Part shown: positions 1-30,527 of the stretch, in pieces
Layout: every line of letters begins with the position of its first letter
Position numbering within the stretch: the stretch's first letter is position 1
From: Isurus oxyrinchus
Taxonomy: Eukaryota
NCBI GenBank assembly: GCA_026770705.1
Contig: JANJGN010000010.1
Coordinates: 40,238,001 to 40,302,000 of the forward strand
DNA length: 64,000 nt
Direction: 5' to 3'
Notes under the pieces: generated by a model
Told to the model about the DNA's origin: nothing
Database searches by the model: none
Seen by the model: the letters and a program-made list of their open reading frames with translations, nothing else
Translations under genes and position numbers: made by a program

Positions 1-52
1 TCATTTTTACTGTTAGGTTCACTTTTAGCATTTGTAGAGTTTCCCTGCAAAT
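1..52 (-). CDS. Repeat exon, short type, cut by the window edge
   Basis: Same acceptor at 53-54; open to the window start. Confidence 0.6.
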   Translation of the reverse strand, partial: MCRETLQMLKVNLTVKM

Positions 53-1394
53 CTACATGAACAAAAATATACATGCCATTGTAAACTCATTGCATACAGG
101 CGCTGAAACTACACTGGTAATGCAGTTCAATAATCATAAAAGAATACCTATGTATTTTGTTAAGCTTAATGTGCCTTCATCTCAGGACAGATATTATTAT
201 TTCTCAGCTAAGTGCTGCATGAGGGGCCTTCAGAATAATGCAAAATTTCATCTCACAGTGAATAATAGTGCCTTGTAGGCTTCGCTCCTTTTCCTCAATA
301 TACATCAATCAATTAGCTTCAAATATTATTGGTAGAATTGTACAACATAGATTCGCATGCTAGCGACATATCTTTTTGGGTTCAAATCATTGTACCAAGA
401 ACGTACTTTAATGTAACGATACATCAATGAAGTTCTACGCTATAAAATGGATCTATTTCTGAATTCTCTATTTTGATCATTTTATCAAATATTATGACCA
501 GTGTGAGAATTCAGCATTCCATCCAAAATGAGTTAGTTTTCAGACAAGATATCTCCTCAAGTCCTGGACTGGAACATCAACACATATCCCCCTGACTGAC
601 AGAACAGGTTTCTGAATAATGGAGCTAATACTTCCTGGAATATGAGAAGGCACTTTGTGCTTTTGATTCTTTAGTGAAAAACAATTCATATTTTCTCCAT
701 TTCAAAGAATACATAAGCCATTTCATTACAACTATAGCCTCCACCATCCATTGCAATCCCTTAGTATATTTACTTTCTCAGTACTTCCACTAGCATGCCT
801 TATTTCTGCTGACTTCTCTACATCCCTTCTTTATTATGTGTTCTCTGTACTTAACATAACATCAAGCAAAAGAAAGATATCTCAACTGGAGTATTTTTAA
901 TCCTTTCTGAGAAAGGAACCTCCACCCAATTCGACAAGCTGTATTTTTGCTCCTCAAGTCCAGTATTGATGATGTGACAGAAGGAAAACAGAAAAGTGAA
1001 TGCTAACTTTGTCTAAATAGACAAGTCCTGATCTGTTTCAAAGGATAGGGAATCTCCATTTGCACTAATGGGGCAGACATTCCGTTGCTCCAATTCTGCA
1101 TGAGTGATATCCACCTGGAGCTCGGCCAAGAACCTTCCTGTGGCACCTGATCACTCAGAGCATGATAGAGGGAGCCAAGAAAGCGTCCAAGCAACAAGAT
1201 TGTTCTGTTCACCTTTGCTTCTCATTTTGTTTAGTGTGTCAATCTCAAAAAAACTGTTGGCCAACATCATCACTGAGCTCGGCCTACATCATCAATGAGA
1301 TTTTGCAAACTGGAGCATTCTCCTACATTCCTCATCATCAATAAATTGTATTTCTATTTATTTGGTTAAATACTGCTTTGTCAGGGGAATCTTC

Positions 1395-1695
1395 CAAATA
1401 CACAACCATTGGGATGTAGATCAGGATAAGCAGCAGGTAGAGGGGCACACCAACACATGCAACTTCCTCTCTAAGACTTACAAAATCCGGACTTGGAAAT
1501 ATGTGTCAATCCTTCATGGGCACTGGGTTGAAAACCAGAAACTGCCTCCCGATTAGCTCTGTGGATGTACCTAGACCACACGGATTGCAGCAATTCCAGA
1601 ACCAGCATTAGCATCATACCATGGACAATTAATGATGCTAATAAATGTACGATCTGTCAAAATTACCCACATCCCATCAGCAAATAAGTGAAAGC
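1395..1695 (+). mobile_element. Decayed LINE 3' end embedded in every array unit (first full copy shown)
   Basis: Aligns by eye with LINE 3' ends at 42340-42612 and 57780-58035 (gacttggaaata, ccttca..g.cactggg, aataaatg, cccacatcccat). Confidence 0.75.
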
Positions 1696-1709
1696 TTTGC
1701 GCAACTTAC

Positions 1710-1799
1710 TATTTTCTTCATTCTTTACACTGCCGGTTCCCTGTTCTTCATTTTTACTGTTAGGATCACTTTTAGCATTTGTAGAGTTCCCCTGCAAAT
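1710..1799 (-). CDS. Repeat exon, short type 90 nt (xLQGNSTNAKSDPNSKNEEQGTGSVKNEEN)
   Basis: Acceptor tttttgttcatgtag, donor A|gtaagt; phase 1-1; open. Confidence 0.68.
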
Positions 1800-3457
1800 C
1801 TACATGAACAAAAATATACATGCCATTGTAAACTCATTGCATACAGGTGCTGAAACTACACTGGTAATGCAGTTCAATAATCATAAAAGAATACCTATGT
1901 ATTTTGTTAAGCTTAATGTGCCTTCATCTCAGGACAGATATTATTATTTCTCAGCTAAGTGCTACATGAGGGGCCTTCAGAATAATGCAAAATTTCATCT
2001 CACAGTGAATAATAGTACCTTGTAGGCTTCCCTCCTTTTCCTCAATATACATCAATCAATTAGCTTCAAATATTATTGGTAGAATTGTACAACATATATT
2101 CGCATGCTAGCGACATATCTTTTTGGGTTCAAATCATTGTACCAAGAACGTACTTTAATGTAACGATACATCAATGAAGTTCTACGCTATAAAATGGATC
2201 TATTTCTGAATTCTCTATTTTGATCATTTTATCAAATATTATGACCAGTGTGAGAATTCAGCATTCCATCCAAAATGAGTTAGTTTTCAGACAAGATATC
2301 TCCTCAAGTCCTGGACTGGAACATCAACACATATCCCCCTGACTGACAGAACAGGTTTCTGAATAATGGAGCTAATACTTCCTGGAATATGAGAAGGCAC
2401 TTTGTGCTTTTGATTCTTTAGTGAAAAACAATTCATATTTTCTCCATTTCAAAGAATACATAAGCCATTTCATTACAACTATAGCCACCACCATCCATTG
2501 CAATCCCTTAGTACATTTACTTTCTCATTTCTTCCACTAGCATGCCTTATTTCTGCTGACTTCTTTACATCCCTTCTTTATTATGTGTTCTCTGTCCTTA
2601 ACATAACATCAAGCAAAAGAAAGATATCTCAACTGGAGTATTTTCAATCCTTTCTGAGAAAGGAACCTCCACCCAATTTGTCAAGCTGAATTTGTGCTCC
2701 TCAAGTCCAGTATTGATGATGTGACAGAAGGAAAACAGAAAAGTGAATGCTAACTTTGTCTAAAAAGACAAGTCCTGATCTGTTCCAAAGGATAGGGAAT
2801 CTCCATTTGCACTAATGGGGCAGACATTCCGTTGCTCCAATTCTGCATGAGTGATATCCACCTAGAGCTCGGCCAAGAACCTTCCTGTGGCACCTGATCA
2901 CTCAGAGCATGATAGAGGGAGCCAAGAAAGCGTCCAAACAACAAGATTGTTCTGTTCACTTTTGCTTCTCATTCTGTTTAGTGTGTCAATCTTAAAAAAA
3001 ACTGTTGGCCGACATCATCACTGAGCTAGGCCTACATCATCAATGAGATTTTGCTAACTGGAGCATTCTCCTACATTTCACATCATCAATAAATTTTATT
3101 TATTTTTATTTGGTTAAATACTGCTTCATCAGGGGAATCGTCCAAATGCACAACCATTGGGATGTAGATCAGGAGAAGCAGCAGGTAGAGGGGCACACCA
3201 ACACATGCAACTTCCTCTCGAAGACTTACAAAATCCAGACTTGGAAATAGCTGTCAATCCTTCATGGGCACTGGGTTGAAAGCCAGAAACTGCCTCCCGA
3301 TCAGCTCTGTGGATGTACCTACACCACACGGATTGCAGCAATTCCAGACCCAGCATTAGCATCATACCAAGGACAATTAATGATGCTAATAAATGTACGA
3401 TCTGTCAAAATTACCCACATCCCATCGGCAAATAAATGAAAGCTTTGCGCAACTTAC

Positions 3458-3547
3458 TATTATCTTCATTCTTTTCACTGTCGGTTCCCTGTTCTTCATT
3501 TTCACTGTTAGGATCACTTTTAGCATTTGTAGAGTTTCCCTGCAAAT
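3458..3547 (-). CDS. Repeat exon, short type 90 nt
   Basis: Same splice sites; open. Confidence 0.68.
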
Positions 3548-5216
3548 CTACATGAACAAAAATATACATGCCATTGTAAACTCATTGCATACAGGCGCTG
3601 AAACTACACTGGTAATGCAGTTCAATAATCATAAAAGAATACCTATGTATTTAGTTAAGCTTAATGTGCCTTCATCTCAGGACAGATATTATTATTTCTC
3701 AGCTAAGTGCTGCATGAGGGGCCTTCAGAATAATGCAAAATTTCATCTCGCAGTGAATAATACTGCGTTGTAGGCTTCCCTCCCTTTCCTCAATATACAT
3801 CAATCAATTTGCTTCAAATATTATTGGTAAAATTGTACAACGTAGATTCACATGCCAGTGACATATCTTTTTGGGTTCAAATCATTCTACCAAGAACGTA
3901 CTTTAATGTAACGATACATCAATGAAGTTCTACGCTGAAAAATGGATCTATTTCTGAATTCTCTATTTTGATCATTTTATCAAATATTATGACCAGTGTG
4001 AGAATTCAGCATTCCATCCAAAATGAGTTAGTTTTCAGACAAGATATCTCCTCAAGTCCTGGACTGGAACATCAACACATATCCCCCTGACTGACAGAAC
4101 AGGTTTCTGAATAATGGAGCTAATACTTCCTGGAATATGAGAAGGCACTTTGTGCTTTTGATTCTTTAGTGAAAAACAATTCATATTTTCTCCATTTCAA
4201 AGAATACATAAGCCATTTCATTACAACTATAGCCTCCACCATCCATTGCAATCCCTTAGTATATTTACTTTCTCAGTACTTCCACTAGCATGCCTTATTT
4301 CTGCTGACTTCTCTACATCCCTTCATTATTATGTGTTCTCTGTCCTTAACATAACATCAAGCAAAAGAAAGATATCTCAACTGGCGTATTTTTAATCCTT
4401 TCTGAGAAAGGAACCTCCACCCAATTAGACAAGCTGAATTTTTGCTCCTCAAGTCCAGTATTGATGATGTGACAGAAGGAAAACAGAAAAGTGAATGCTA
4501 ACTTTGTCTAAATAGACAAGTCCTGATCTGTTTCAAAGGAATCGGGAATCTCCATTTGCACTAATGGGGCAGACATTTCGTTGCTCCAATTCTGCATGAG
4601 TGATATCCACCTAGAGCTCGGCCAAGAAACTTCCTGTGGCACCTGATCACTCAGAGCATGATAGAGGGAGCCAAGAAAGCGTCCAAGCAACAAGATTGTT
4701 CTGTTCACCTTTGCTTCTCATTTTGTTTAGTGTGTCAATCTCAAAAAAAACTGTTGGCCAACATCATCACTGAGCTAGGCCTACATCATCAATGAGATTT
4801 TGCTAACTGGAGCATTCTCCTACATTCTCCATCATCAATAAATTGTATTTCTATTTATTTGGTTAAATACTGCTTCGTCAGTATTCGTCAGGGGAATCTT
4901 CCAAATACACAACCATTGGGATGTAGATCAGGAGAAGCAGCAGGTAGAGGGGCACACCAACACATGCAACTTCCTCTCTAAGACTTACAAAATCCGGACT
5001 TGGAAATATTTGTCAATCCTTCATGGGCACTGGGTTGAAAACCAGAAACTGCCTCCCGATCAGCTCTGTGGAGGTACCTAGACCACACGGATTGCAGCAA
5101 TTCCAGAACCAGCATTAGCATCATACCAAGGACAATTAATGATGCTAATAAATGTACGATCTGTCAAAACTACCCACATCCGATCAGCAAATAAATGAAA
5201 GCTTTGCGCAACTTAC

Positions 5217-5306
5217 TATTTTCTTCATTCTTTTCACTGTCGGTTCCCTGTTCTTCATTTTTACTGTTAGGATCACTTTTAGCATTTGTGGAGTTTCCCT
5301 GCAAAT
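5217..5306 (-). CDS. Repeat exon, short type 90 nt
   Basis: Same splice sites; open. Confidence 0.68.
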
Positions 5307-6964
5307 CTACATGAACAAAAATATACATGCCATTGTAAACTCATTGCATACAGGCGCTGAAACTACACTGGTAATGCAGTTCAATAATCATAAAAGAATA
5401 CCTATGTATTTAGTTAAGCTTAATGTGCCTTCATCTCAGGACAGATATTATTATTTCTCAGCTAAGTGCTGCATGAGGAGCCTTCAGAATAATGCAAAAT
5501 TTCATCTCGCAGTGAATAATAGTGCGTTGTAGGCTTCCCACCCTTTCCTCAATATACATCAATCAATTTGCTTCAAATATTATTGGTAAAATTGTACAAC
5601 GTAGATTCACATGCCAGTGACATATCTTTTTGGGTTCAAATCATTGTACCAAGAACGTACTTTAATGTAACGATACATCAATGAAGTTCTACGCTGAGAA
5701 ATGGATCTATTTCTGAATTCTCTATTTTGATCATTTTATCAAATATTATGACCAGTGTGAGAATTCAGCATTCCATCCAAAATGAGTTAGTTTTCAGACA
5801 AGATATCTCCTCAAGTCCTGGACTGGAACATCAACACATATCCCCCTGACTGACAGAACAGGTTTCTGAATAATGGAGCTAATACTTCCTGGAATATGAG
5901 AAGGCACTTTGTGCTTTTGATTCTTTAGTGAAAAACAATTCATATTTTCTCCATTTCAAGGAATACATCAGCCATTTCATTACAACTATAGCCTCCACCA
6001 TCCATTGCAATCCCTTAGTATATTTACTTTCTCAGTACTTCCACTAGCATGCCTTATTTCTGATGACTTCTCTACATCCCTTCTTTATTATGTGTTCTCT
6101 GTCCTTAACATTACATCAAGCAAAAGAAAGATATCTCAACTGGAGTATTTTCAATCCTTTCTGAGAAAGGAAACTCCACCCAATTAGACAAGCTGAATTT
6201 TTGCTCCTCAAGTCCAGTATTGATAATGTGACAGAAGGAAAACAGAAAAGTGAATGCTAACTTTGTCTAAATAGACAAGTCCTGATCTGTTTCAAAGGAT
6301 AGGGAATCTCCATTTGCACTAATGGGGCAGACGTTCCGTTGCTCCAATTCTGCATGAGTGATATCCACCTGGAGCTCGGCCAAGAACCTTCCTGTGGCAC
6401 CTGATCACTCAGAGCATGATAGAGGGAGCCAAGAAAGCGTCCAAACAACAAGATTGTTCTGTTCACCTTTGCTTCTCATTTTGTTTAGTGTGTCAATCTC
6501 AAAAAAAACTGTTGGCCAACATCATCACTGAGCTAGGCCTACATCATCAATGAGATTTTGCTAACTGGAGCATTCTCCTACATTCCCCATCATCAATAAA
6601 TTGTATTTCTATTTATTTGGTTAAATACTGCTTCGTCAGGGGAATCTTCCAAATACACAACCATTGGGATGGAGATCAGGAGAAGCAGCAGGTAGAGGGG
6701 CACACCAACACATGCAACTTCCTCTCTAAGACTTACAAAATCCGGACTTGGAAATATGTGTCAATCCGTCATGGGCACTGGGTTGAAAACCAGAAACTGC
6801 CTCCCGATCAGCTCTGTGGATGTACCTAGACCACACGGATTGCAGCAATTCCAGAACCAGCATTAGCATCATACCAAGGACAATTAATGATGCTAATAAA
6901 TGTACGATCTGTCAAAATTATCCACATCCCATCGGCAAATGAATGAAAGCTTTGCGCAACTTAC

Positions 6965-7054
6965 TATTTTCTTCATTCTTTACACCGTCGGTTCCCTGTT
7001 CTTCATTTTTACTGTTAGGATCACTTTTAGCATTTGTAGAGTTTCCCTGCAAAT
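6965..7054 (-). CDS. Repeat exon, short type 90 nt
   Basis: Same splice sites; open. Confidence 0.68.
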
Positions 7055-8711
7055 CTACATGAACAAAAATATACATGCCATTGTAAACTCATTGCATACA
7101 GGCGCTGAAAATACATTGGTAATGCAGTTCAATAATCATAAAAGAATACCTATGTATTTAGTTAAGCTTAATGTGCCTTCTTCTCAGGACAGATATTATT
7201 ATTTCTCAGCTAAGTGCTGCATGAGGGTCCTTCAGAATAATGCAAAATTTCATCTCGCAGTGAATAATAGTGCCTTGTAGGCTTCCCTCCTTTTCCTCAA
7301 TATACATCAATCAATCAGCTTCAAATATTATTAGTAAAATTGTACAACATAGATTCACATGCGAGCGACATATCTTTTTGGGTTCAATCATTGTACCAAG
7401 AACGTACTTCAATGTAACGATACATCAATGAAGTTCTACGCTATAAAATGGATCTATTTCTGAATTCTCTATTTTGATCATTTTATGAAATATTATGACC
7501 AGTGTGAGAATTCAGCATTCCATCCAAAATGAGTTAGTTTTCAGACAAGATATCTGCTCAAGTCCTGGACTGGAACATCAACACATATCCCCCTGACTGA
7601 CAGAACAGGTTTCTGAATAATGGAGCTAATACTTCCTGGAATATGAGAAGGCACTTTGTGCTTTTGATTCTTTAGTGAAAAACAATTCATATTTTCTCCA
7701 TTTCAAAGAATACATCAGCCATTTCATTACAACTATAGCCACCACCATCCATTGCAATCCCTTAGTATATTTACCAACTCAGTACTTCCACTAACATGCC
7801 TTATTTCTGCTGACTTCTCTACATCCCTTCTTTATTATGTGTTCTCTGTCCTTAACATAACATCAAGCAAAAGAAAGATATCTCAACTGGAGTATTTTCA
7901 ATCCTTTCTGAGAAAGGAACCTCCACCCAATTAGGCAAGCTGAATTTTTGCTCCACAAGTCCAGTATTGATAATGTGACAGAAGGAAAACAGAAAAGTGA
8001 ATGCTAACTTTGTCTAAATAGACAAGTCCTGATCTGTTCCAAAGGATAGGGAATCTCCATTTGCACTAATGGGGCAGACATTCCGTTGCTCCAATTCTGC
8101 ATGAGTGATATCCACCTAGAGCTCGGCCAAGAACCTTCCTGTGGCACCTGATCACTCAGAGCATGATAGAGGGAGCCAAGAAAGCGTCCAAACAACAAGA
8201 TTGTTCTGTTCACCTTTGCTTCTCATTCTGTTTAGTGTGTCAATCTTAAAAAAAACTGTTGGCCTACATCATCACTGAGCTAGGCCAACATCATCAATGA
8301 GATTTTGCTAACTGGAGCATTCTCCTACATTCCACATCATCAATAAATTTCATTTCTTTTTACTTGGTTAAATACTGCTTCATCAGGGGAATCGTCCAAA
8401 TACACAACCATTGGGATCTAGATCAGGAGAAGCAGCAGGTAGAGGGGCACACAAACACATGCAACTTCCTCTCTAAGACTTACAAAATCCGGACTTGGAA
8501 ATATGTGTCAATCCTTCATGGGCACTGGGTTGAAAACCAGAAACTGCCTCCCGATCAGTTCTGTGGATGTACCTACACCACACGGATTGCAGCAATTCCA
8601 GAACCAGCATTAGCATCATACCAAGGACAATTAATGATGCTAATAAATGTACGATCTGTCAAAATTACCCACATCCCATCGGCAAATAAATGAAAGCTTT
8701 GCGCAACTTAC

Positions 8712-8831
8712 CATTTTCTTCATTGTTTACACCGTCGGTTCCCTGTTCACGGTTTGCTGGTTTGTCATTATGAACCTCCACCATTTCAGTCGTAGGTTCA
8801 CTTTTATCATTTGAAGAGTTTCCCTTCGAAT
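8712..8831 (-). CDS. Repeat exon, long type 120 nt (xSKGNSSNDKSEPTTEMVEVHNDKPANREQGTDGVNNEEN)
   Basis: Acceptor tttttgttcatgtag, donor G|gtaagt; phase 1-1; open. Confidence 0.68.
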
Positions 8832-10513
8832 CTACATGAACAAAAATATACATGCCATTGTAAACTCATTGCATACTGGATCTGAAACTAAACTGATAAT
8901 GCATTTGAATAATCATAAAAGAATACCTGTGCTTTTAGTAAAGCTTAATTTTCCTTCACCTCAGGACAGATATTATTATTTCTCAGCTAAGTGCTGCATG
9001 AGGGACCTTCAGAATAATGCAAAATTTCATCTCACAGTGAATAATAGTTCCTTGTATGCTTCCCTCCCTTTCCTCAATATACATCAATCAATTAGCTTCA
9101 AGTATTATTGGTAAAATTGTACAACGTAGTTTCACATGCGGCCCAGGAACCTACTAGCAACATATCTTTTTGGGGTTAAATCATTGTACAAAGAATGTAC
9201 TTCAATGTAACGATACATCAGTGAAGTTCTACGCTGAAAAATGGATCTATTCCTGAATTCTACATTTTGATCATGCTATCAAATATTATGACAAATGTGT
9301 GAATTCATCATTTCATCCAAAATGAGTTAGGTTTCAGACAAGATATCAGCTCAAGTCCTGGACTGGAACATCAACATATTTCCCACAGACTGACAGACCA
9401 GGTTTCTGAATAATGGAGTTATTACTTCGATGAATATGACAAGGCATTTTGTGCTTTTGATGCTTCAGTGAAAAACAATTCATATTTTCTCCATTTCAAA
9501 GAGTACATAAGCCATTTCGTTACAACTATTGCCTCCACCATCCATTGCAATCCCTTAGTATATTTACTTTCTCAGTACTTCCACTAGCATGCCTTATTTC
9601 TGCTGACTTCTCTACATCCCTTCTTTATTATGTGTTCTCTGTCCTTAACATAACATCAAGCAAAAAATGATATCTCAACTGGATTATTTTTAATCCTTTC
9701 TGAGAAAGGAACCTCCACCCAATTAGACAAGCTGAATTTTTGCTCCTCAAGTCCAGTATTGATGATGTGACAGAAGGAAAACAAAAAAGTGAATGCTAAC
9801 TTTGTCTAAATAGACATGTCCTGATCTGTTTCAAAGGATAGGGAATCTCCATTTGCACTAATGGGGCAGACATTCCGTTGCTCCAATTCTGCATGAGTGA
9901 TATCCACCTGGAGTTCGGCCAAGAACCTTCCTGTGGCAACTGATCACTCAGAGCATGATAGAGGGAGCCAAGAAAGCGTCCAAACAACAAGATTGTTCTG
10001 TTCACCTTTGCTTCTCATTTTGTTTAGTGTGTCAATCTCAAAAAAAACTGTTGGCCAACATCATCACTGAGCTAGGCCTACATCATCAATGAGATTTTGC
10101 TAACTGGAGCATTCTCCTACATTCTCCATCATCAATAAATTGTATTTCTATTTATTTGGTTAAATACTGCTTCGTCAGTATTCGTCAGGGGAATCTTCCA
10201 AATACACAACCATTGGGATGTAGATCAGGAGAAGCAGCAGGTAGAGGGGCACACCAACACATGCAACTTCCTCTCTAAGACTTACAAAATCCGGACTTGG
10301 AAATATTTGTCAATCCTTCATGGGCACTGGGTTGAAAACCAGAAACTGCCTCCCGATCAGCTCTGTGGAGGTACCTAGACCACACGGATTGCAGCAATTC
10401 CAGAACCAGCATTAGCATCATACCAAGGACAATTAATGATGCTAATAAATGTACGATCTGTCAAAACTACCCACATCCGATCAGCAAATAAATGAAAGCT
10501 TTGCGCAACTTAC

Positions 10514-10603
10514 TATTTTCTTCATTCTTTTCACTGTCGGTTCCCTGTTCTTCATTTTTACTGTTAGGATCACTTTTAGCATTTGTGGAGTTTCCCTGCA
10601 AAT
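10514..10603 (-). CDS. Repeat exon, short type 90 nt
   Basis: Same splice sites; open. Confidence 0.68.
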
Positions 10604-12261: not shown

Positions 12262-12351
12262 TATTTTCTTCATTCTTTACACCGTCGGTTCCCTGTTCTT
12301 CATTTTTACTGTTAGGATCACTTTTAGCATTTGTAGAGTTTCCCTGCAAAT
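12262..12351 (-). CDS. Repeat exon, short type 90 nt
   Basis: Same splice sites; open. Confidence 0.68.
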
Positions 12352-19305: not shown

Positions 19306-19425
19306 CATTTTCTTCATTGTTTACACCGTCCATTCCCTGTTCACGGTTTGCTGGTTTGTCATTATGAACCTCCACCATTTCAGTCGTAGGTTCACTTTTA
19401 TCATTTGAAGAGTTTCCCTTCGAAT
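19306..19425 (-). CDS. Repeat exon, long type 120 nt
   Basis: Same splice sites; open. Confidence 0.68.
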
Positions 19426-21096
19426 CTACATGAACAAAAATATACATGCCATTGTAAACTCATTGCATACTGGATCTGAAACTAAACTGATAATGCATTT
19501 GAATAATCATAAAAGAATACCTGTGCTTTTAGTAAAGCTTAATTTTCCTTCACCTCAGGACAGATATTATTATTTCTCAGCTAAGTGCTGCATGAGGGAC
19601 CTTCAGAATAATGCAAAATTTCATCTCACAGTGAATAATAGTTCCTTGTATGCTTCCCTCCCTTTCCTCAATATACATCAATCAATTAGCTTCAAGTATT
19701 ATTGGTAAAATTGTACAACGTAGTTTCACATGCGGCCCAGGAACCTACTAGCAACATATCTTTTTGGGGTTAAATCATTGTACAAAGAATGTACTTCAAT
19801 GTAACGATACATCAGTGAAGTTCTACGCTGAAAAATGGATCTATTCCTGAATTCTACATTTTGATCATGCTATCAAATATTATGACAAATGTGTGAATTC
19901 ATCATTTCATCCAAAATGAGTTAGGTTTCAGACAAGATATCAGCTCAAGTCCTGGACTGGAACATCAACATATTTCCCACAGACTGACAGACCAGGTTTC
20001 TGAATAATGGAGTTATTACTTCGATGAATATGACAAGGCATTTTGTGCTTTTGATGCTTCAGTGAAAAACAATTCATATTTTCTCCATTTCAAAGAGTAC
20101 ATAAGCCATTTCGTTACAACTATTGCCTCCACCATCCATTGCAATCCCTTAGTATATTTACTTTCTCAGTACTTCCACTAGCATGCCTTATTTCTGCTGA
20201 CTTCCCAACATCCCTTCTTTATTATGTGTTCTCTGTCCTTAACATAACATCAAGCGAAAGAATGATAACTCAACTGGAGTATTTTCAATCCTTTCTGAGA
20301 AAGGAACCTCCACCCAATTAGACAAGCTGAATTTTTGCTCCTCAAGTCCAGTATTGATGATGTGACAGAAGGAAAACAGAAAAGTGAATGCTAACTTTGT
20401 CTAAATAGACAAGTCCTGATCTGTTCCAAAGGATAGGGAATTCCATTTGCACTAATGGGGCAGACATTCCGTTGCTCCAATTCTGCATGAGTGATATCCA
20501 CCTAGAGCTCGGCCATGAACGTTCCTGTGGCACCTGATCACTCAGAGCATGATAGAGGGAGCCAAGAAAGCGTCCAAACAACAAGATTGTTCTGTTCACC
20601 TTTGCTTCTCATTTTGTTTAGTGTGTCAATCTTAAAAAAAACTGTTGGCCTACATCATCACTGAGCTCGGCCTACATCATCAATGAGATTTTGCTAACTG
20701 GAGCATTCTCCTACATTCCCCATCATCAATAAATTGTATTTCTTTTTATTTGGTTAAATAATGCTTCGTCAGGGGAATCTTCCAAATACACAAACATTGT
20801 GATGTAGATCAGAGAAGCAGCAGGTAGAGGGGCACACCAACACATGCAACTTCCTCTCCAAGACTTACAAAATCCGGACTTGGAAATATATGTCAATCCA
20901 TCATGGGCACTGGGTTGAAAACCAGAAACTGCCTCCCGATCAGCTCTGTGGATGTACCTAGACCACACGGATTGCAGCAATTCCAGAACCAGCATTAGCA
21001 TCATACCAAGGACAATTAATGATGCTAATAAATGTACGATCTGTCAAAATTATCCACATCCCATCGGCAAATAAATGAAAGCTTTGCGCAACTTAC

Positions 21097-21186
21097 TATT
21101 TTCTTCATTCTTTACACCGTCGGTTCCCTGTTCTTCATTTTTACTGTTAGGATCACTTTTAGCATTTGTAGAGTTTCCCTGCAAAT
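21097..21186 (-). CDS. Repeat exon, short type 90 nt (xLQGNSTNAKSDPNSKNEEQGTDGVKNEEN)
   Basis: Acceptor tttttgttcatgtag, donor A|gtaagt; phase 1-1; open. Confidence 0.68.
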
Positions 21187-22843
21187 CTACATGAACAAAA
21201 ATATACATGCCATTGTAAACTCATTGCATACAGGCGCTGAAAATACACTGGTAATGCAGTTCAATAATCATAAAAGAATACCTATGTATTTAGTTAAGCT
21301 TAATGTGCCTTCTTCTCAGGACAGATATTATTATTTCTCAGCTAAGTGCTGCATGAGGGTCCTTCAGAATAATGCAAAATTTCATCTCGCAGTGAATAAT
21401 AGTGCCTTGTAGGCTTCCCTCCTTTTCCTCAATATACATCAATCAATTAGCTTCAAATATTATTAGTAAAATTGTACAACATAGATTCACATGCGAGCGA
21501 CATATCTTTTTGGGTTCAATCATTGTACCAAGAACGTACTTCAATGTAACGATACATCAATGAAGTTCTACGCTATAAAATGGATCTATTTCTGAATTCT
21601 CTATTTTGATCATTTTATGAAATATTATGACCAGTGTGAGAATTCAGCATTCCATCCAAAATGAGTTAGTTTTCAGACAAGATATCTGCTCAAGTCCTGG
21701 ACTGGAACATCAACACATATCCCCCTGACTGACAGAACAGGTTTCTGAATAATGGAGCTAATACTTCCTGGAATATGAGAAGGCACTTTGTGCTTTTGAT
21801 TCTTTAGTGAAAAACAATTCATATTTTCTCCATTTCAAAGAATACATCAGCCATTTCATTACAACTATAGCCACCACCATCCATTGCAATCCCTTAGTAT
21901 ATTTACCAACTCAGTACTTCCACTAACATGCCTTATTTCTGCTGACTTCTCTACATCCCTTCTTTATTATGTGTTCTCTGTCCTTAACATAACATCAAGC
22001 AAAAGAAAGATATCTCAACTGGAGTATTTTCAATCCTTTCTGAGAAAGGAACCTCCACCCAATTAGGCAAGCTGAATTTTTGCTCCACAAGTCCAGTATT
22101 GATAATGTGACAGAAGGAAAACAGAAAAGTGAATGCTAACTTTGTCTAAATAGACAAGTCCTGATCTGTTCCAAAGGATAGGGAATCTCCATTTGCACTA
22201 ATGGGGCAGACATTCCGTTGCTCCAATTCTGCATGAGTGATATCCACCTAGAGCTCGGCCAAGAACCTTCCTGTGGCACCTGATCACTCAGAGCATGATA
22301 GAGGGAGCCAAGAAAGCGTCCAAACAACAAGATTGTTCTGTTCACCTTTGCTTCTCATTCTGTTTAGTGTGTCAATCTTAAAAAAAACTGTTGGCCTACA
22401 TCATCACTGAGCTGGGCCAACATCATCAATGAGATTTTGCTAACTGGAGCATTCTCCTACATTCCACATCATCAATAAATTTCATTTCTTTTTATTTGGT
22501 TAAATACTGCTTCATCAGGGGAATCGTCCAAATACACAACCATTGGGATCTAGATCAGGAGAAGCAGCAGGTAGAGGGGCACACAAACACATGCAACTTC
22601 CTCTCTAAGACTTACAAAATCCGGACTTGGAAATATGTGTCAATCCTTCATGGGCACTGGGTTGAAAACCAGAAACTGCCTCCCGATCAGTTCTGTGGAT
22701 GTACCTACACCACACGGATTGCAGCAATTCCAGAACCAGCATTAGCATCATACCAAGGACAATTAATGATGCTAATAAATGTACGATCTGTCAAAATTAC
22801 CCACATCCCATCGGCAAATAAATGAAAGCTTTGCGCAACTTAC

Positions 22844-22963
22844 CATTTTCTTCATTGTTTACACCGTCCATTCCCTGTTCACGGTTTGCTGGTTTGTCAT
22901 TATGAACCTCCACCATTTCAGTCGTAGGTTCACTTTTATCATTTGAAGAGTTTCCCTTCGAAT
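22844..22963 (-). CDS. Repeat exon, long type 120 nt
   Basis: Same splice sites as the 24635 exon; open. Confidence 0.68.
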
Positions 22964-24634
22964 CTACATGAACAAAAATATACATGCCATTGTAAACTCA
23001 TTGCATACTGGATCTGAAACTAAACTGATAATGCATTTGAATAATCATAAAAGAATACCTGTGCTTTTAGTAAAGCTTAATTTTCCTTCACCTCAGGACA
23101 GATATTATTATTTCTCAGCTAAGTGCTGCATGAGGGACCTTCAGTATAATGCAAAATTTCATCTCACAGTGAATAATAGTTCCTTGTATGCTTCCCTCCC
23201 TTTCCTCAATATACATCAATCAATTAGCTTCAAGTATTATTGGTAAAATTGTACAACGTAGTTTCACATGCGGCCCAGGAACCTACTAGCAACATATCTT
23301 TTTGGGGTTAAATCATTGTACAAAGAATGTACTTCAATGTAACGATACATCAGTGAAGTTCTACGCTGAAAAATGGATCTATTCCTGAATTCTACATTTT
23401 GATCATGCTATCAAATATTATGACAAATGTGTGAATTCATCATTTCATCCAAAATGAGTTAGGTTTCAGACAAGATATCAGCTCAAGTCCTGGACTGGAA
23501 CATCAACATATTTCCCACAGACTGACAGACCAGGTTTCTGAATAATGGAGTTATTACTTCGATGAATATGACAAGGCATTTTGTGCTTTTGATGCTTCAG
23601 TGAAAAACAATTCATATTTTCTCCATTTCAAAGAGTACATAAGCCATTTCGTTACAACTATTGCCTCCACCATCCATTGCAATCCCTTAGTATATTTACT
23701 TTCTCAGTACTTCCACTAGCATGCCTTATTTCTGCTGACTTCTCTACATCCCTTCTTTATTATGTGTTCTCTGTCCTTAACATAACATCAAGCAAAAAAT
23801 GATATCTCAACTGGATTATTTTCAATCCTTCTGAGAAAGGAACCTCCACCCAATTAGACAAGCTGTATTTTTGCTCCTCAAGTCCAGTACTGATAATGTG
23901 ACAGAAGGAAAACAGCAAATTGAATGCTAACTTTGTCTACATAGACAAGTTCCGATCAGTTCCAAAGGACATGGAATCTCCATTTGCACTAATGTGGCAG
24001 TCCTTCAGTTGCTGCAATTCTGCATGAGTGATATCCACCTAGAGCTTGGCCAAGAACCTTCCAGTGGCACTAGCTCACTCAGAGCATGGTAGAGGGAGCC
24101 AATAAAGGGTCCAAACAACAAGATTGTTCTGTTCACCTTTGCTTCTCATTTTGTTTAGTGTGTCAATCTTAAAAAAAACTGTTGGCCTACATCATCACTG
24201 AGCTAGGCCTACATCATCAATGAGATTTTGCTAACTGGAACATTCTCCTACAGTCCACATCAAGAATAAATTGTATTTCTTTTTATTTGGTTAAATACTG
24301 CTTCCTCAAGGGAATCTTCCAAATTCACAACCATTGGGATCTAGATAAGGAGGGGCAGCAGGTAGAGGGGCACACCAAAACAATCAACTACCTCTCTAAG
24401 ACTTACAAAATCCGGACTTGGAAATATGTGTCAATCCTTCATGGGCACTGGGTTGAAAACCAGAAACTGCCTCCCGATCAGCTCTGTGGATGTAGCTAAA
24501 CCACACGGATTGCAGCAATTCCAGAACCAGCATTAGCAGCATACCAAGGACAATTAATGATGCTAATAAATGTACGATCTGTCAAAATTACCCACATCCC
24601 ATCGGCAAATAAATGAAAGCTTTGCGCAACTTAC

Positions 24635-24754
24635 CATTTTCTTCATTGTTTACACCGTCCGTTCCCTGTTCACGGTTTGCTGGATTGTCATTATGAACCT
24701 CTACCATTTTATTCGTAGGTTCACTTTTATCAATTGAAGAGTTTCCCTTCGAAT
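24635..24754 (-). CDS. Repeat exon, long type 120 nt (DSKGNSSIDKSEPTNKMVEVHNDNPANREQGTDGVNNEEN)
   Basis: Acceptor tttttgttcatgtag, donor G|gtaagt; phase 1-1; open. Confidence 0.68.
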
Positions 24755-26403
24755 CTACATGAACAAAAATATACATGCCATTGTAAACTCATTGCAAACA
24801 GGATCTGAAACTACACTGACAATGCATTTGAATAATCATAAAAGAATACCTGTGCATTTAGTTAAGCTTAATGTGCCTTCACCTCAGGACATATTATTAT
24901 TTCTCAGCTAAGTGCTGCATGAGGGGCCTTCAGAATAATGCAAAATCTCATCTCACAGTGAATAATAGTTCCTTGTAGGCTACCCTCCCTTTCCTGAATA
25001 TACATCAAACAATTAGATTCACATATTATTGGTAAAATTGTATAACGTAGATTCACATGCTAGCAACATATCTTTTTGGGTTCAAATCATTGTACCAAGA
25101 ACGTACTTCAATGTAACAATACATCAATGAAGTTCTACGCTGAAAAATGGATCTATTTCTGAATTCTCTATTTTGATCATTTTATCAAATATTATGACCA
25201 GTGTGAGAATTCAGCATTCCATCCAAAATGAGTTAGTTTTCAGACAAGATATCTGCTCAAGTCCTGGACTGGAACATCAACACATATCCCCCTGACTGAC
25301 AGAACAGGTTTCTGAATAATGGAGCTAATACTTCCTGGAATATGAGAAGGCACTTTGTGCTTTTGATTCTTTAGTGAAAAACAATTCATATTTTCTCCAT
25401 TTCAAAGAATACATCAGCCATTTCATTACAACTATAGCCTCCCCCATCCATTGCAATCCCTTAGTATATTTACCAACTCAGTACTTCCACTAGCATGCCT
25501 TATTTCTGCTGACTTCTCTACATCCCTTCTTTATTGTGAGTTCTCTGTCCTTAACATAACATCAAGCAAAAGAAAGATATCTCAACTGGAGTATTTTCAA
25601 TCCTTTCTGAGAAAGGAACCTCCACCCAATTAGACAAGCTGAATTTTTGCTCCTCAAGTCCAGTATTGATGATGTGACAGAAGGAAAACGGAAAAGTGAA
25701 TGCTAACTTTGTCTAAATAGACAAGTCCTGATCTGTTCCAAAGGATAGGGAATCTCCATTTGCACTAATGGGGCAGACATTCCATTACTCCAATTCTGCA
25801 TGAGTGATATCCACCTAGAGCTCGGCCAAGAACCTTCCTGCGGCACCTGATCACTCAGAGCATGATAGAGGGAGCCAAGAAAGCGTCCAAACAACAAGAT
25901 TGTTCTGTTCACCTTTGCTTCTCATTTTGTTTAGTGTGTCAATCTTATAAAAAACAGCTGGACTACATCATCACTGAGCTAGGCCTACATCATCAATGAG
26001 ATTTTGCTAACTGTAACATTCTCTTACATTTCACATCATCAATAAATTGTATTTCTTTTTATTTGGTTAAATACTGTTTCCTCAAGGGAATCTTCCAAAT
26101 ACACAACCATTGGGATCTAGATCAGGAGAAGCAGCAGGTAGAGGGGCACACCAACACATGCAACTTCCTCTCCAAGACTTACAAAATCCAGACTTGGAAA
26201 TATGTGTCAATCCTTCATGGGCACTGGGTTGAAAACCAGAAACTGCCTCCCGATCAGCTCTGTGGATGTACTTAAACCACACGGATTGCAGCGATTCCAG
26301 AACCAGCATTACCAACATACAATTAATGATTCTAATAAATGTACGATCTGTCAAAATTACCCACATCCCATCGGCAAATAAATGAAAGCTATGCGCAATT
26401 TAC

Positions 26404-26523
26404 CATTTTCTTCATTGTTCACACCGTCCGTTCCCTGTTCACGGTTTTCTGGATTGTCATTATGAACCTCTACCATTTTAGTCATAGGATCTCTTTTATC
26501 ATTTGAAGAGTTTCCTTGTGAAT
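26404..26523 (-). CDS. Repeat exon, long type 120 nt (DSQGNSSNDKRDPMTKMVEVHNDNPENREQGTDGVNNEEN)
   Basis: Acceptor ttcgttcaagtag, donor G|gtaaat; phase 1-1; open. Confidence 0.62.
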
Positions 26524-26561
26524 CTACTTGAACGAAAATATACATGCCATTGTATACTCAT

Positions 26562-28300
26562 GGGCCTGAATTTTCATTGGCCGGGGAGCAGATCAGGAGC
26601 GTGCGGAGGCGGGGACGGGTGCTGCCATTTTACGCGGATGTGTAAATTAAGGCCCGCCTAGTGTATTTCTCGACTCTTCACCCATTCTAGGCTGCTCACA
26701 ATGGCAAGTGCAACGCCATAGCCATGGTGAGTGGGCCAGTCCGGAGGGTAGGCCAGTAGAGCAGGCCAGGCTGGAGGCTATGGTGGGGGGCCAGTTTGTC
26801 TCTGTTTTTTGGATGGCTGCCTTGCTGCCCTCCTCGATGAGGTGGCAGCACGGTGGGAAGTGCTGGTCACCCAGGATGGGAGGAGGAGGCCCTTCCACAT
26901 TACAAAACTTGCCTGTGAGGATGTGACGGAGGTGGTGAGCTTCCGTGATGTGGTGCAGCACACCTGGATCCAGTGTCGCAAGCGCTTCAATGACTTGCTG
27001 CGCTCTGGCAGGGTGAGCATCATGTTGGCATCGGGCATTTAACCCAGTAGGTCGGCTTTCCCCCTGCTGCCACCACCCCCAAGTTTGAGTGTCGTGACTG
27101 AATGATTGAACGCATGTATCCTTTGCTGGGCGGGCAAGTAGATACTGCCCATGCTGAGGCCAGCGTGAGAGGGTGATGAGATGTGTTTTGCCCCCGCACA
27201 TGTGTTACACTGAGTCCTACATGATTAGTTTGGGGGCAACCTGGAGGAGCTGCACCTAGGCACTGTGTTAGAACTCCAGGACATGTCCAAGTCAGGGTGA
27301 TGACACGCTGGGAGGGGACCTTCAAGGTGGCGTGGCAACGAATCATCTGCTGCCCTCTGTGCTCCACATGCTGTGCCTCCTTGCTATGGAAGGATATACT
27401 GTGTGGTGCTTAATGTGATGTAGGCAGCATGTGTCCAACAGGGTGGTGGGGAGGTGTGGAGCAGGCTTAGCATCTTGGTGTGAGTGCTCGGCAGCAGTGG
27501 GGTGAGGAGGCACTGGAGCCCTCATGTGTCCCACTCTGGTTGGTGTGGGCCATGCATGAGCAGAGTCCATGTGCAATTTGCACAAATCAATACTTGTCTC
27601 TCATTTTCAGGAGAAGAATGCATAGACTGTGGCCGAGCATATGAGGACTAGCGGTGGCCAGGTGCAGATTGCCATTCTAAGCCGTTTCGAGCAGGAGGCC
27701 CTGGATCTGGAGAGGCACCATGCACCCAGGTCCACTGGTGTCAGTGAGGCTGGGGTGCCATCACCAGATATTTATGCCCAACAGTGAGGTCAGTATCGTC
27801 CTCCCAATGGCCATAACACTGCTGAATGTTACATGATTCAATTTTGCAACATGGCTTGACCATTGGCTTTGGAATGATGAGAGCATAATGATCCGGGGGA
27901 CAGGGAAGAACTTTGTCATTGTCTCCACACTACGTGATCCACTGTCCTTGTTCTTCCTTTCAGCATCATCGAAGCAGGGCCGGGAGGAGGAGCAACAGAG
28001 GCCTTTCAGCTTCATTGACAGGCTGCATGAATCCTCCCATTGCATCCCCCCACCCAGCAGCTGTTCAGCTGCATGCAGCTAGCCTACGAGAGATTCTGGA
28101 GGGAGAAGTGTGTGTGTGTGGCAGAGCCTTTCGGAGCCTCATGCAAGCACTCTCCAACATAAGCGGATCCTTTCCACACTCATTTCAATCTCCTGAGCAT
28201 TTCCAATGTTGCCTGCTGGGGTTCATTTTCAGTTAACCATCTGAGCTGACCTGTATCTCTGCCTGCCCAGTGATCACACTCCCATACAGCACCTGATCAC
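26562..28300 (+). mobile_element. PIF/Harbinger-like DNA transposon remnant with a Myb/SANT-like ORF fragment
   Basis: Starts with TIR-like GGGCCTGAATTTT. ORF 26809-27042 (EDVTEVVSFRDVVQHTWIQCRKRFNDLLRSGR) resembles the Harbinger Myb/SANT-like DNA-binding protein. Right end approximate. Confidence 0.7.
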
Positions 28301-28339
28301 ACCCACCACGACTTTCATTTCACTTATATTAGGCAGCGT

Positions 28340-29317
28340 GGTAGCACTACGGTTTTTCTTTCACTCCCCTGTCTTTTCCCCTCTCCCAGTCACCCACTTC
28401 CTTTCCCCCATCACTGTCAACCCCCCACCCCCCAACTTCCACCTCCACTCCATGACCCACCAATCACAACCCTTTTCTTTCAGGGATGTCCAGGTTCCCT
28501 TCCTTCCTGAAACTCCCACCCCCATCCACATTAACCTGCCTGGCCTCCTTCTTCCCAGAGTCTGTGTCTGCCTCTAAGCCCCCACCAACCACCCCCTCCA
28601 TCCCTTCTACCGCTACCGTCAAGCCCTCACCCTCCCACTTGACTCTGCCCTCGGTCATTCTCACCTTTCCTTTGTACCATGCCCACACTCAGGTCTCTCC
28701 CCAGGAGGCAGTCATGGGCTCATCAGAGCCCTCGCTTGTACATTCACTTGGACATCCCCCTCCAGGCTCCTTCCCACCTTGGAACTGCTTCCCCGTCTGG
28801 ACTCCTTCCTCCCCCTGGACTCCTTTTCCTCTCCACACACCTTCCCCCCACACCCCCGGACTCCTTCCTCCCCCTGGCATCCTTTCTGCCTTTGCACTCC
28901 TTGCCCCACCAGACTCCCTTCCTCCCCCTAGATTCCTTTCTATCTCTGCACTCCTTCCTTCCTCTGGATTTCTTTCTCCCCCTGAGCTTCTTCACCTCTA
29001 CACATTCCTTCCCCCCTCAGAATCCCTTCCCTTACAAATTCCACCCCTCCTTACACCTATCTCCCCAGTTACCGTCTTCTTCCCCTCCTCCCCTGTATTC
29101 CCTCTACCCCCCAATCTCCTTCCCAACACCTTCGTCCACCCCTTCAACCCCCATCCCCCTGACACCTTCTTTCCCCCCTCCCAACCTCACCACCCCGACA
29201 CCTTTGTTCACCCCTCCCGACCTCCAACACCGTCGAACCCCAACCTCCAAACCTCACCACACCCTGATACCACTCCTCTCTCAGTTGATCCTAGACCTTC
29301 ATCTCCCACACCCATCT
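28340..29317. repeat. ~1-kb C/T-rich low-complexity tract (G-rich on the minus strand)
   Basis: Extreme pyrimidine skew; degenerate ctccttcc(c)ccc motifs. Confidence 0.85.
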
Positions 29318-30527
29318 TTTGCCAACTGGAACACTCTCCTACGTTCCACAACATCAATAAATTATGTTTCTTTTTATTTGAGCAAATACTGCTTCCTCAA
29401 GGGCAGTTTCCAAACACACAACCACTGACATTTAGAAGAACGAGGGCTGCAAGTGCATGGGAAAACCACCACAAGTAATTTCCTCTCCACGATGTACACA
29501 ATCCTGACTTGGGAATTTGTGTCCATTCCTTCATCGTCACTGGGTTGAAAACCTGAAAATCCCTCCCTTAGAGCTCTGCGGCTGTAACTACACCACACTG
29601 ATCACAGTGATTCCAGAATGATGATCACTCAAGGTCAATGAAAGATGCCAATAAATGTATCATGTGTCAACGTTCAGTGAGCAAATTAATGAAAACTTTG
29701 TGCAAGTTATTTTTTTCTTCTTTGATCCCACCTTCAGCTCCTGGCTTACCTTTTTCTGTATTGACATCTTGTGAACCTTCCATTTGATTCTTGGTATTGC
29801 TTTGATCATTTGAAGAGTTTTGCTGTGATTCTACATGAATTGAAAAATGCACGTTAATGTAAACACATTGTATACAAGTGCAGGAACTATAATGATTAAG
29901 CATTTGCTTAGTGATAAATGAATACATATGTATTTAGTTAAGCTCATTGCACCCATATCTAAGGACAAATATTATTATTTCTCAGATAAGTGCTGCATCT
30001 TAAGAATAATGCAATATTGCATCTCAGTGAATAATAACTTCTTTTGCTGCCCTGAATATACATCAGTCAATTGATTTCAAATGTTATCAGCAGAATTGCA
30101 TAATGTTGTTATACACAAGCTCAGGAATATACTGGCAAAATATCTTCTTGGGGTCGAATGACAACCGTGTGAATCCATCAACCCATGAAATAGGCACGAG
30201 GTTTCAGTCAAAATATTTCCTCAAGCCTCGAACTGGAATGTCACCACATTTCTTTGTGACTGACAGAAAAGGTTATGCTCCACCCAACCAAACAAGCTGA
30301 GTTTTTGATCCTCAATTCCAGTAGCGATGTTATAACAAAAGGAAAACAGGGAAGTAGATGCTAACTAACTAAAGAGACAAGTCCTGAGCTGCTTGAAATG
30401 CCACATTCTGTTTGTTTGCACACAGATGGGGCAGGCTACCAGGTGCTGCAATTCTGTATGAGTGATGTCCACAATGAGCTTGGCTGAGAACCTTTGAGTG
30501 GCCCCAGGTCACTCAGAGCATGATAAT
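29318..30527. repeat. Strongly diverged, internally deleted monomer of the same repeat
   Basis: Colinear matches such as catcaataaatt, ctacatgaa, tattattatttctcag.taagtgctgcat, ctccacccaa, agacaagtcctga and cactcagagcatgata. Confidence 0.88.
29750..29830 (-). CDS. Diverged repeat exon, 81 nt (ESQQNSSNDQSNTKNQMEGSQDVNTEK)
   Basis: Acceptor ttttcaattcatgtag is homologous to the array exons; donor AAG|gtaagc; phase 1-1; open. Confidence 0.65.

What the first reader, a model, noticed from the sequence alone, without database searches (positions are those of the whole stretch)
1..29830. The apparent macrosatellite is a tandem array of coding exons: one symmetric phase-1 exon per 1.75-kb unit
Seen: on the minus strand every unit has a polypyrimidine acceptor (tttttgttcatgtag), an exon of exactly 90 or 120 nt and a donor (gtaagt; gtaaat in one). 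All 15 complete copies are stop-free and phase 1-1, and the junction codons are GAT or AAT. The only exonic length variant is an in-frame 30 nt, while indels in the intervening sequence are often frame-breaking (1 nt, 11 nt). Spliced together: 9x30 + 6x40 + 27 = 537 aa of N/E/S/K/D-rich repeats (e.g. DSKGNSSNDKSEPTTEMVEVHNDKPANREQGTDGVNNEEN), continuing off the window. Inference: whole exon-intron cassettes were amplified like satellite DNA to build a long, probably disordered repeat protein. Repeat masking and the ORF track hide this.
Basis: partly seen in the sequence, partly recalled or inferred. Interest (0 to 1): 0.9.

Follow-up and report, generated by a model that had tools for sequence, protein, structure and literature searches.

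The report
Amplified tail exons of shark B7-H6-like gene
A 1.75-kb DNA unit repeated at least 15 times each carries one intact, in-frame small exon, and these most likely build a very long acidic tail behind the membrane anchor of a shark immune-ligand gene of the B7-H6 type, though no RNA data were available to show that the exons are used.

Summary
On the minus strand there are 17 copies of one exon: 81 nt at 29830, 120 nt at 26523, then 14 complete copies and one cut copy, each 90 or 120 nt. All are phase 1-1 and open only in that frame, and they sum to 537 codons.

Context changes the reading. Upstream on the same strand lie four more exons:
- a leader exon (62735-62687);
- a V-set exon (56502-56173);
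- a C1-set exon (47060-46740);
- a transmembrane exon (41609-41505).

All four are phase 1. Their best solved-structure matches are B7-H3 and B7-H6. The array therefore follows the membrane anchor and most likely encodes a cytoplasmic tail, not a free-standing repeat protein.

"All copies open" is weak evidence on its own. In the units, 53 of 212 arbitrary AG..GT open segments are equally intact. The stronger evidence is the divergence between long-exon and short-exon units:
- 9.5% in the upstream intron;
- 0.7% in the last 45 nt before the exon;
- 19.9% in the exon;
- 0% in the first 21 nt after it.

No RNA run held the locus, and no database protein carries the repeat, so splicing is inferred. 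The closest precedent is the chicken BG genes. A first-reader note 179 kb away in this genome describes a similar cassette tail; it is unchecked.

The parts
62823..62833 (-). ISRE/IRF-like motif GAAAGTGAAAG, about 90 nt upstream of the predicted start codon
   Evidence: It is the only exact copy in the window. Its position is read. A regulatory role is inferred, not tested.
62687..62735 (-). Predicted leader exon: MKILTFCCLVSLISTS, then G|gtaaag, ending in phase 1
   Evidence: It is the only ATG-plus-hydrophobic-plus-phase-1-donor candidate with a good donor upstream of the V exon.
56173..56502 (-). Ig V-set exon, 330 nt, phase 1-1
   Evidence: Pfam V-set 2.2e-8. Best PDB matches are CD276/B7-H3 at 2e-12 and NCR3LG1/B7-H6 at 1.1e-11. 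Boundaries were read.
48300..55630 (.). Penelope-like retroelements (RT plus GIY-YIG) in opposite orientations, inside the V-C1 intron
   Evidence: ORFs. Pfam RVT_1 1.2e-6 and GIY-YIG 0.002.
46740..47060 (-). Ig C1-set exon, 321 nt, phase 1-1
   Evidence: Pfam C1-set 1.3e-12. PDB matches are IgM constant domains at 6e-11 and B7-H6 at 1.6e-9. Boundaries were read.
41505..41609 (-). Transmembrane exon, 105 nt, phase 1-1: (E)PGNHSPVISAIICVTVLLCITLGCGIFIWRRQSK
   Evidence: Found by the hydrophobicity scan; sequence and splice sites read. Its donor AAG|GTAAGA ranks 1 of 116 in 1.8 kb.
29750..29830 (-). First, most diverged repeat exon, 81 nt, phase 1-1. The ancestral donor is lost and a new upstream donor AAG|GTAAGC is used
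   Evidence: The donor ranks 1 of 123.
26562..29316 (.). G+C-rich insertion, unclassified and probably a transposon, in the intron between the first two repeat exons
   Evidence: There is a break in unit homology, a G+C jump and no Pfam hit.
26404..26523 (-). Second repeat exon, 120 nt, phase 1-1, with weakened splice sites (caagtag acceptor, gtaaat donor)
   Evidence: The donor ranks 8 and the acceptor ranks 17.
1..24813 (-). Tandem array of 14 complete 1747-1791-nt cassettes plus one cut by the window edge. Exons (start-end on the minus strand): 24754-24635, 22963-22844, 21186-21097, 19425-19306, 17648-17559, 15900-15811, 14128-14009, 12351-12262, 10603-10514, 8831-8712, 7054-6965, 5306-5217, 3547-3458, 1799-1710, 52-1 (cut)
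8832..19425 (-). Two 5297-bp higher-order repeats (long-short-short) that are 100% identical. A third copy starts at 8831
   Evidence: Identity matrix.

Best explanation
The array is the 3' part of one minus-strand gene of the B7 family, closest to B7-H6/B7-H3. The gene model is leader, IgV, IgC1, transmembrane exon, then at least 17 small exons. Each small exon sits in its own 1.75-kb cassette.

All exons of the gene are phase 1-1, so any number of cassettes can be spliced in a row without breaking the frame. The cassettes spread by unequal crossing-over, most recently as a three-unit block of 5.3 kb.

The product would be a type I membrane protein. Its cytoplasmic tail would be a long, Asn/Glu/Ser/Asp/Lys-rich, strongly acidic and probably disordered chain of 30- and 40-residue modules: 537 residues in the window, with more beyond its edge.

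Shown: the exon anatomy, the phases, the domain identities, the repeat structure and the divergence profile. Inferred: that the exons are spliced into mRNA, that nothing else lies between the TM exon and the first repeat exon, and what the tail does. My guess for the function is a length-variable spacer or docking region, as proposed for chicken BG tails.
For: 1. Seventeen exon copies have canonical splice sites and a single shared open frame.

2. That frame is the phase used by the V, C1 and TM exons upstream on the same strand. Those exons are confidently V-set, C1-set and B7-H6/B7-H3-like.

3. The TM exon ends in a strong donor, so at least one exon must follow it. No other leader-like exon with a good donor lies between it and the array.

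4. The divergence between long-exon and short-exon units follows a valley-peak-valley profile: 9.5% at -300..-46, 0.7% at -45..-1, 19.9% in the exon, 0% at +1..+21, and 4% beyond. Exon versus flank gives Fisher p from 3e-3 to 4e-8. This is frozen splice signals around a fast-changing exon.

5. Of the 43 alignment columns fixed between long and short units, 42 lie inside the exon.

6. The exon's donor ranks 1-2 of about 100 GT sites and its acceptor ranks 5 of about 120 AG sites per 1.8 kb. That is as good as or better than the Ig and TM exons of the same gene.

7. The old copy at 29830 lost the ancestral donor but has a new strong donor that restores phase 1-1.

8. There is a precedent in the same superfamily. 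Chicken BG genes encode their cytoplasmic tails by 13-36 tiny exons (PMC4046983).
Against: There is no expression evidence. No listed RNA run holds the array. The four same-species runs laid on the C1-TM stretch cover only dispersed repeats, with depth 0 on both exons.

No protein in 1.84 billion representatives carries the repeat, and none was found for the C1 exon.

The units are young, 92-100% identical, so open frames carry little weight: 25% of arbitrary pseudo-exons are equally intact.

pN/pS between exon types is about 1, and the exon is not better conserved than the intron in the old copy, about 75% in both. There is therefore no classical purifying-selection signal on the peptide.

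The 3' end of the gene is off the window. The 11.7 kb between the TM exon and the first repeat exon could hide other exons or a terminal exon. A content of 21% Asn is unusual for a vertebrate cytoplasmic tail.
Confidence: 0.55

Rival explanations
1. The array is a silent satellite seeded by one real exon. Either the gene's transcripts end upstream of the array, or the whole gene is an unexpressed recent pseudogene. The copies look intact only because they are young.
For: Units are 92-100% identical and two 5.3-kb blocks are identical. In the control, 53 of 212 arbitrary pseudo-exons are also intact in all unit types. pN/pS is about 1. No RNA and no database protein were found. If the donor of the 29830 copy were not used, the frame would run into a stop 24 codons later.
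Against: The splice flanks are invariant (0-0.7%) inside introns that differ by 4-9.5% between unit types, and the exon body differs by 20%. A neutral satellite should show neither the valleys nor the peak. The V, C1, TM and leader exons are all intact with canonical Cys/Trp residues. Exon copies with sites this strong inside a transcription unit would normally be spliced in.
Confidence: 0.25
2. The repeat exons are expressed, but not as a cytoplasmic tail. One option is that they form a separate downstream gene with its own first exon. The other is that the phase 1-1 TM exon is skipped in some transcripts, giving a secreted V-C1 protein with a long glycosylated acidic tail.
For: All exons are phase 1-1, so skipping the TM exon keeps the frame. 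Every copy keeps an N-S-S or N-S-T sequon, and long exons gain an N-D-S sequon at the junction; these would matter only outside the cell. There are 11.7 kb of unexplored intron between the TM exon and the array.
Against: No leader-like exon with a good phase-1 donor lies between 41.5 and 29.8 kb. The TM exon has the best donor in its neighbourhood and a typical stop-transfer RRQSK. Sequons are expected by chance in a sequence with 21% Asn and 11% Ser.
Confidence: 0.12
3. The number of copies is partly an assembly artefact. The identical 5297-bp blocks would then be one block written two or three times.
For: Units 4-6 and 7-9 are 100% identical over 5297 bp, and units 10-11 are nearly so.
Against: At least eight distinct unit types remain after identical copies are collapsed, so a multi-copy array exists in any case. 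This rival changes the count, not the nature of the feature.
Confidence: 0.15

Closest known systems
Chicken BG genes (butyrophilin/B7 superfamily)
   Same: They are B7-superfamily type I membrane proteins whose long cytoplasmic tail is encoded by many small symmetric exons, 13-36 per gene. Exon number differs between paralogues, and exon groups are shuffled by recombination (PMC4046983).
   Different: BG has a single V domain and no C1. Its tail exons are 21 or 24 nt and encode heptads of a coiled coil. Here the exons are 81, 90 or 120 nt, they contain Pro and Gly, and they are acidic and Asn-rich, so a coiled coil is unlikely. They sit in 1.75-kb cassettes arranged as a satellite-like higher-order repeat.
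B7-H6 (NCR3LG1) and B7-H3 (CD276)
   Same: The layout is leader, IgV, IgC1 and TM, with every exon in phase 1. The V exon matches CD276 at 2e-12 and B7-H6 at 1.1e-11, and the C1 exon matches B7-H6 at 1.6e-9.
   Different: From my own knowledge, the human B7-H6 tail is one long exon with Gag-like sequence and signalling motifs. Here the tail is an exon array with no Tyr at all. Orthology was not tested.
Coding macrosatellites / tandem exon-cassette amplifications (LPA kringle IV-2, NBPF, DMBT1, titin PEVK; from established knowledge)
   Same: Kilobase-scale tandem units each carry complete exon(s) in a symmetric phase, so copy number sets protein length.
   Different: Those units encode folded domains or are documented in mRNA. 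Here the unit encodes a 30- or 40-residue low-complexity module, and inclusion in mRNA is not shown.

Membership tests
B7 family, B7-H6/B7-H3-like | N-terminal V-set Ig domain with B7-type sequence | tested here: met
   Pfam V-set 2.2e-8. The top PDB matches are CD276 at 2e-12 and NCR3LG1 at 1.1e-11.
B7 family, B7-H6/B7-H3-like | Membrane-proximal constant Ig domain (C1-set in B7-H6) | tested here: met
   Pfam C1-set 1.3e-12. B7-H6 is the best match that is not an antibody, at 1.6e-9.
B7 family, B7-H6/B7-H3-like | Single-pass TM after the Ig domains, with separate phase-1 exons | tested here: met
   The TM exon 41609-41505 has 23 hydrophobic residues followed by RRQSK. All exon phases are 1-1.
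B7 family, B7-H6/B7-H3-like | Orthology to NCR3LG1 (phylogeny, linkage to NKp30, NKp30-binding residues) | not tested
   No full-length relatives could be fetched: the length filter applied and one search came back blank, and the joined model was not searched by rule. Only first-reader notes speak of a B7-H6-like cluster nearby.
Chicken BG-type tail | Tail exons of 21/24 nt encoding heptad coiled coil, with a single V ectodomain | tested here: not met
   The exons are 81/90/120 nt with Pro/Gly and no heptad pattern, and the ectodomain is V plus C1. It works like BG but is not a member.
Tandem exon-cassette amplification (coding macrosatellite) | Kilobase tandem units, each with a complete exon, intact splice sites and symmetric phase | tested here: met
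Tandem exon-cassette amplification (coding macrosatellite) | Exons included in mature mRNA / protein | not testable with these tools
   No RNA holder was listed. Contigs of four same-species runs do not cover the gene's exons.
Tandem exon-cassette amplification (coding macrosatellite) | Evidence of selection on the exon or its splice signals | tested here: inconclusive
   In favour: the splice flanks are at 0-0.7% versus 4-9.5% in the neighbouring intron, and the exon is at 19.9%. Against: pN/pS is about 1, and the pseudo-exon control shows intactness alone is uninformative.

The most novel reading that the evidence does not exclude
The cassettes may be an adaptive, copy-number-variable module system. 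Two exon types have diverged 2-5 times faster than their introns while their splice signals stayed frozen. Blocks of them are still being amplified. This would give members of a shark B7-H6-like multigene family tails of different length and make-up: cytoplasmic tails or, by in-frame skipping of the TM exon, secreted ones. It would be an independent invention of the chicken BG principle in the oldest jawed vertebrates.
Probability: 0.3. Interest if true: 0.65.

Novelty: new variant of a known kind. Interest (0 to 1): 0.5.

Why it matters
If the exons are used, this is a second, independent case in the B7 superfamily of a cytoplasmic tail built by amplifying small symmetric exons. Chicken BG is the first. 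Here it would be caught in the act, with identical 5.3-kb blocks in a satellite-like array.

It would show that repeat masking hides the larger part of an immune gene's coding sequence in shark genomes. It would also give a tractable example of protein length set by unequal crossing-over.

The exon-limited divergence with frozen splice flanks is a useful sequence-only criterion for finding such hidden exons elsewhere.

The function of B7-H6-like genes in sharks, and of any such tail, is unknown.

Tried and rejected
- **Tandem Repeats Finder.** It found nothing because its longest period is 500. The array was defined by pattern search and alignment instead.
- **Rfam.** No RNA family was found in the window.
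- **39-aa long exon against 1.84 billion representative proteins.** The one hit at E 1.4e-4, P0001, is a reverse-transcriptase concatenate and was rejected as spurious.
- **C1 exon in the search for homologous proteins.** Nothing was found. The length filter (0.55-1.75 times the query) excludes full-length relatives, so the blank means little.
- **The look-up of sequencing runs, kind rna.** No holder was found, only five small same-species runs with next to none of the words.
- **Read laying on 41450-47100.** Only dispersed repeats were covered and both exons had depth 0. This is no evidence either way.
- **Translated and nucleotide searches for further repeat exons upstream of 29.9 kb.** None was found. 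The hits at 42.4, 46.2 and 57.9 kb belong to a dispersed repeat inside the unit's intron.
- **Hydrophobic stretch at 57281-57225.** It was considered as a leader and rejected: it lies in TE-like sequence, with no ATG or donor.
- **Extracellular mucin-like stalk.** This was my first idea. I dropped it when the TM exon was found upstream of the array.
- **Papers PMC4594805 and PMC3709836 on B7H6 evolution.** Neither is held.
- **Joined spliced model.** Exons were searched one by one by reference, and tail composition was counted exon by exon.
Full report
**1. The observation**

The window has no N and about 38% G+C over 1-26 kb. On the minus strand the string tttttgttcatgtag occurs 15 times, 1747-1791 nt apart. 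Each occurrence is followed by exactly 90 or 120 nt and then gtaagt.

Two older copies lie upstream:
- an exon at 26523-26404 (120 nt), with acceptor caagtag and donor gtaaat;
- an exon at 29830-29750 (81 nt), with donor gtaagc.

A 2.75-kb G+C-rich insertion (26562-29316) splits the intron between them.

The tally is nine 90-nt, six 120-nt and one 81-nt complete exons, which is 537 codons, plus one copy cut by the window edge. Only the phase-1 frame is open in all 17 copies. The only exonic indel is 30 nt, whereas intron indels are 1, 10 and 15 nt.

**2. Structure of the array**

The units fall into about eight distinct types that are 92-98% identical. A three-unit block (long-short-short, 5297 bp) is present at least twice at 100% identity, and a third copy is nearly identical. 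So the latest amplification is very recent, or the assembly wrote one block more than once. I could not lay DNA reads to decide between these.

**3. How much is "all copies intact" worth?**

Little. I enumerated every AG..GT-bounded, symmetric, open segment of 60-200 nt in a reference unit, on both strands. I then asked how many keep both dinucleotides, the frame and an open reading frame in all nine unit types. The answer is 53 of 212.

**4. What does separate it**

(a) Splice signals. I used a rough vertebrate splice matrix written from textbook frequencies (approximate). With it, the array donor ranks 1 (long exon) or 2 (short exon) of about 100 GT sites in the surrounding 1.8 kb. The acceptor ranks 5 of about 120 AG sites. 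That is as good as or better than the undoubted Ig and TM exons of the same gene.

(b) The divergence profile between long-exon and short-exon units:

| Region relative to the exon | Divergence |
|---|---|
| -900..-601 | 4.3% |
| -600..-301 | 8.4% |
| -300..-46 | 9.5% |
| -45..-1 | 0.7% |
| exon | 19.9% |
| +1..+21 | 0% |
| further downstream | 4-5% |

Comparing the exon with its flanks gives Fisher p from 3e-3 to 4e-8 for three independent pairs. Of the 43 columns fixed between long and short units, 42 lie in the exon.

A neutral satellite predicts neither the two valleys at the splice signals nor the peak between them. This is the pattern of a spliced exon whose body changes fast.

Between the types, non-synonymous change (pN 0.17-0.22) exceeds the neighbouring intron rate. 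Synonymous change (pS 0.12-0.25) is too noisy to tell, since there are only about 16 synonymous sites. pN/pS is about 1. So there is no classical purifying signal on the peptide, and diversifying selection is suggested but not proven.

(c) The oldest copy. It lost the ancestral donor (GGTAAGT became ATAACT) but uses a new, strong upstream donor, AAG|GTAAGC. This donor ranks 1 of 123 and again gives a symmetric phase 1-1 exon.

**5.

Upstream on the same strand lie four more exons:
- **Leader exon, 62735-62687.** It encodes MKILTFCCLVSLISTS and has the donor CAG|GTAAAG.
- **V-set exon, 56502-56173.** Pfam V-set 2.2e-8. PDB matches are CD276/B7-H3 at 2e-12 and B7-H6 at 1.1e-11.
- **C1-set exon, 47060-46740.** Pfam C1-set 1.3e-12. 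B7-H6 at 1.6e-9 is the best match that is not an antibody.
- **Transmembrane exon, 41609-41505.** It has 23 hydrophobic residues followed by RRQSK. Its donor AAG|GTAAGA is the best in its neighbourhood.

All four are phase 1 at both ends, except the leader, which ends in phase 1. This is the rule for immunoglobulin-superfamily genes, and it is exactly the phase of the repeat exons. The TM exon's last base G joined to the first repeat exon's AA gives GAA.

No further repeat exon and no convincing second leader lies between 41.5 and 29.8 kb.

The simplest model is one gene: leader, V, C1, TM, then the exon array. The array then lies after the membrane anchor, so it encodes a cytoplasmic tail. 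It is neither a stalk nor a free-standing repeat protein. My own first guess, a mucin-like stalk, was wrong for the same reason.

**6. The predicted tail**

Composition was counted exon by exon, without joining the exons. There are 537 residues in the window:
- N 21%, E 14%, S 11%, D 9%, K 8%;
- net charge -71;
- no Phe, Trp, Tyr or Cys.

It has no Pfam match. It should be disordered and polyanionic. It contains no tyrosine motif, so it is not an ITIM- or ITAM-type signalling tail.

**7. Expression and relatives**

No RNA run holding the array was listed. Contigs of four small same-species runs laid on the C1-TM stretch covered only dispersed repeats, with depth 0 on both exons. These results say nothing either way.

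No protein among 1.84 billion representatives carries the repeat; the single weak hit is a reverse-transcriptase artefact. The C1 exon found nothing in the length-limited search.

Exons were searched one at a time by reference. Splicing and translation therefore remain inferred.

**8. Comparison with what is known**

The closest working analogue is the chicken BG family, which belongs to the B7/butyrophilin superfamily. Its long cytoplasmic tails are encoded by 13-36 exons of 21 or 24 nt, and the number varies among paralogues (PMC4046983).

This locus is not a BG gene. It has V plus C1 rather than V alone, exons of 81-120 nt rather than 21 nt, and no heptads.

By domain content it belongs with B7-H6/B7-H3, but orthology was not tested.

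As a genomic phenomenon it belongs with coding macrosatellites such as LPA kringle IV-2 or NBPF (from established knowledge). It differs in that the module is a short low-complexity peptide.

Earlier first-reader notes of this scan place a cluster of B7-H6-like genes within 0.6 Mb of this window. One, 179 kb away, is described as having an amplified 120-nt cytoplasmic exon cassette. These notes are unchecked and are not independent evidence. I reached the cytoplasmic reading before seeing them. The scan's notes also call the genome a shark's; I did not verify the species.

**9. Verdict**

- Best explanation (0.55): an amplified exon-cassette tail of a shark B7-H6-like membrane protein.
- Main rival (0.25): a young, unused satellite of exon copies.
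- It is a new variant of a known kind.
- Interest is moderate (0.5). The anatomy is clean and the divergence profile is striking, but use of the exons is unproven and the principle has precedents.

Noticed in passing
window 62823-62833 (-): An exact GAAAGTGAAAG (tandem GAAA, ISRE/IRF-type element) lies about 90 nt upstream of the predicted start codon of the B7-H6-like gene. It is the only exact copy in the 64 kb. It hints at interferon-inducible expression.
   Followed up: partly
window 48300-55630: Penelope-like retroelement copies (RT plus GIY-YIG ORFs of 390-530 aa, partly intact) sit in opposite orientations inside the 9-kb V-C1 intron.
   Followed up: partly
window 26562-29316: A 2.75-kb G+C-rich insertion breaks the first cassette. 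It contains a G-rich low-complexity stretch (about 28.4-29.3 kb on the minus strand). It has no Pfam match and is unclassified.
   Followed up: partly
window 1-24813, each unit: The upstream half of each intron co-varies with the type (long or short) of the exon that follows it. The first roughly 850 nt after every exon is homogenised across types. So the evolutionary unit is 'upstream half-intron plus exon', not 'exon plus downstream intron'. The cause is not explained.
   Followed up: partly
window 1-29749, about 350-460 nt downstream of each repeat exon: Each cassette carries an AATAAA within 'caaataaaaagaaa'. If the donor is not used, the frame ends 15 codons after the exon. Each cassette could in principle act as an alternative terminal exon. 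This was not tested.
   Followed up: no
window 42366-42519, 46223-46271, 57790-57971: A dispersed repeat of about 180 nt, also present at positions 290-470 of every array unit, recurs in the introns of the same gene. It is heavily covered in all four runs laid.
   Followed up: no
window 31760-32095 (+), 34389-34721 (-): LINE-type reverse-transcriptase fragments lie in the TM-to-array intron.
   Followed up: no
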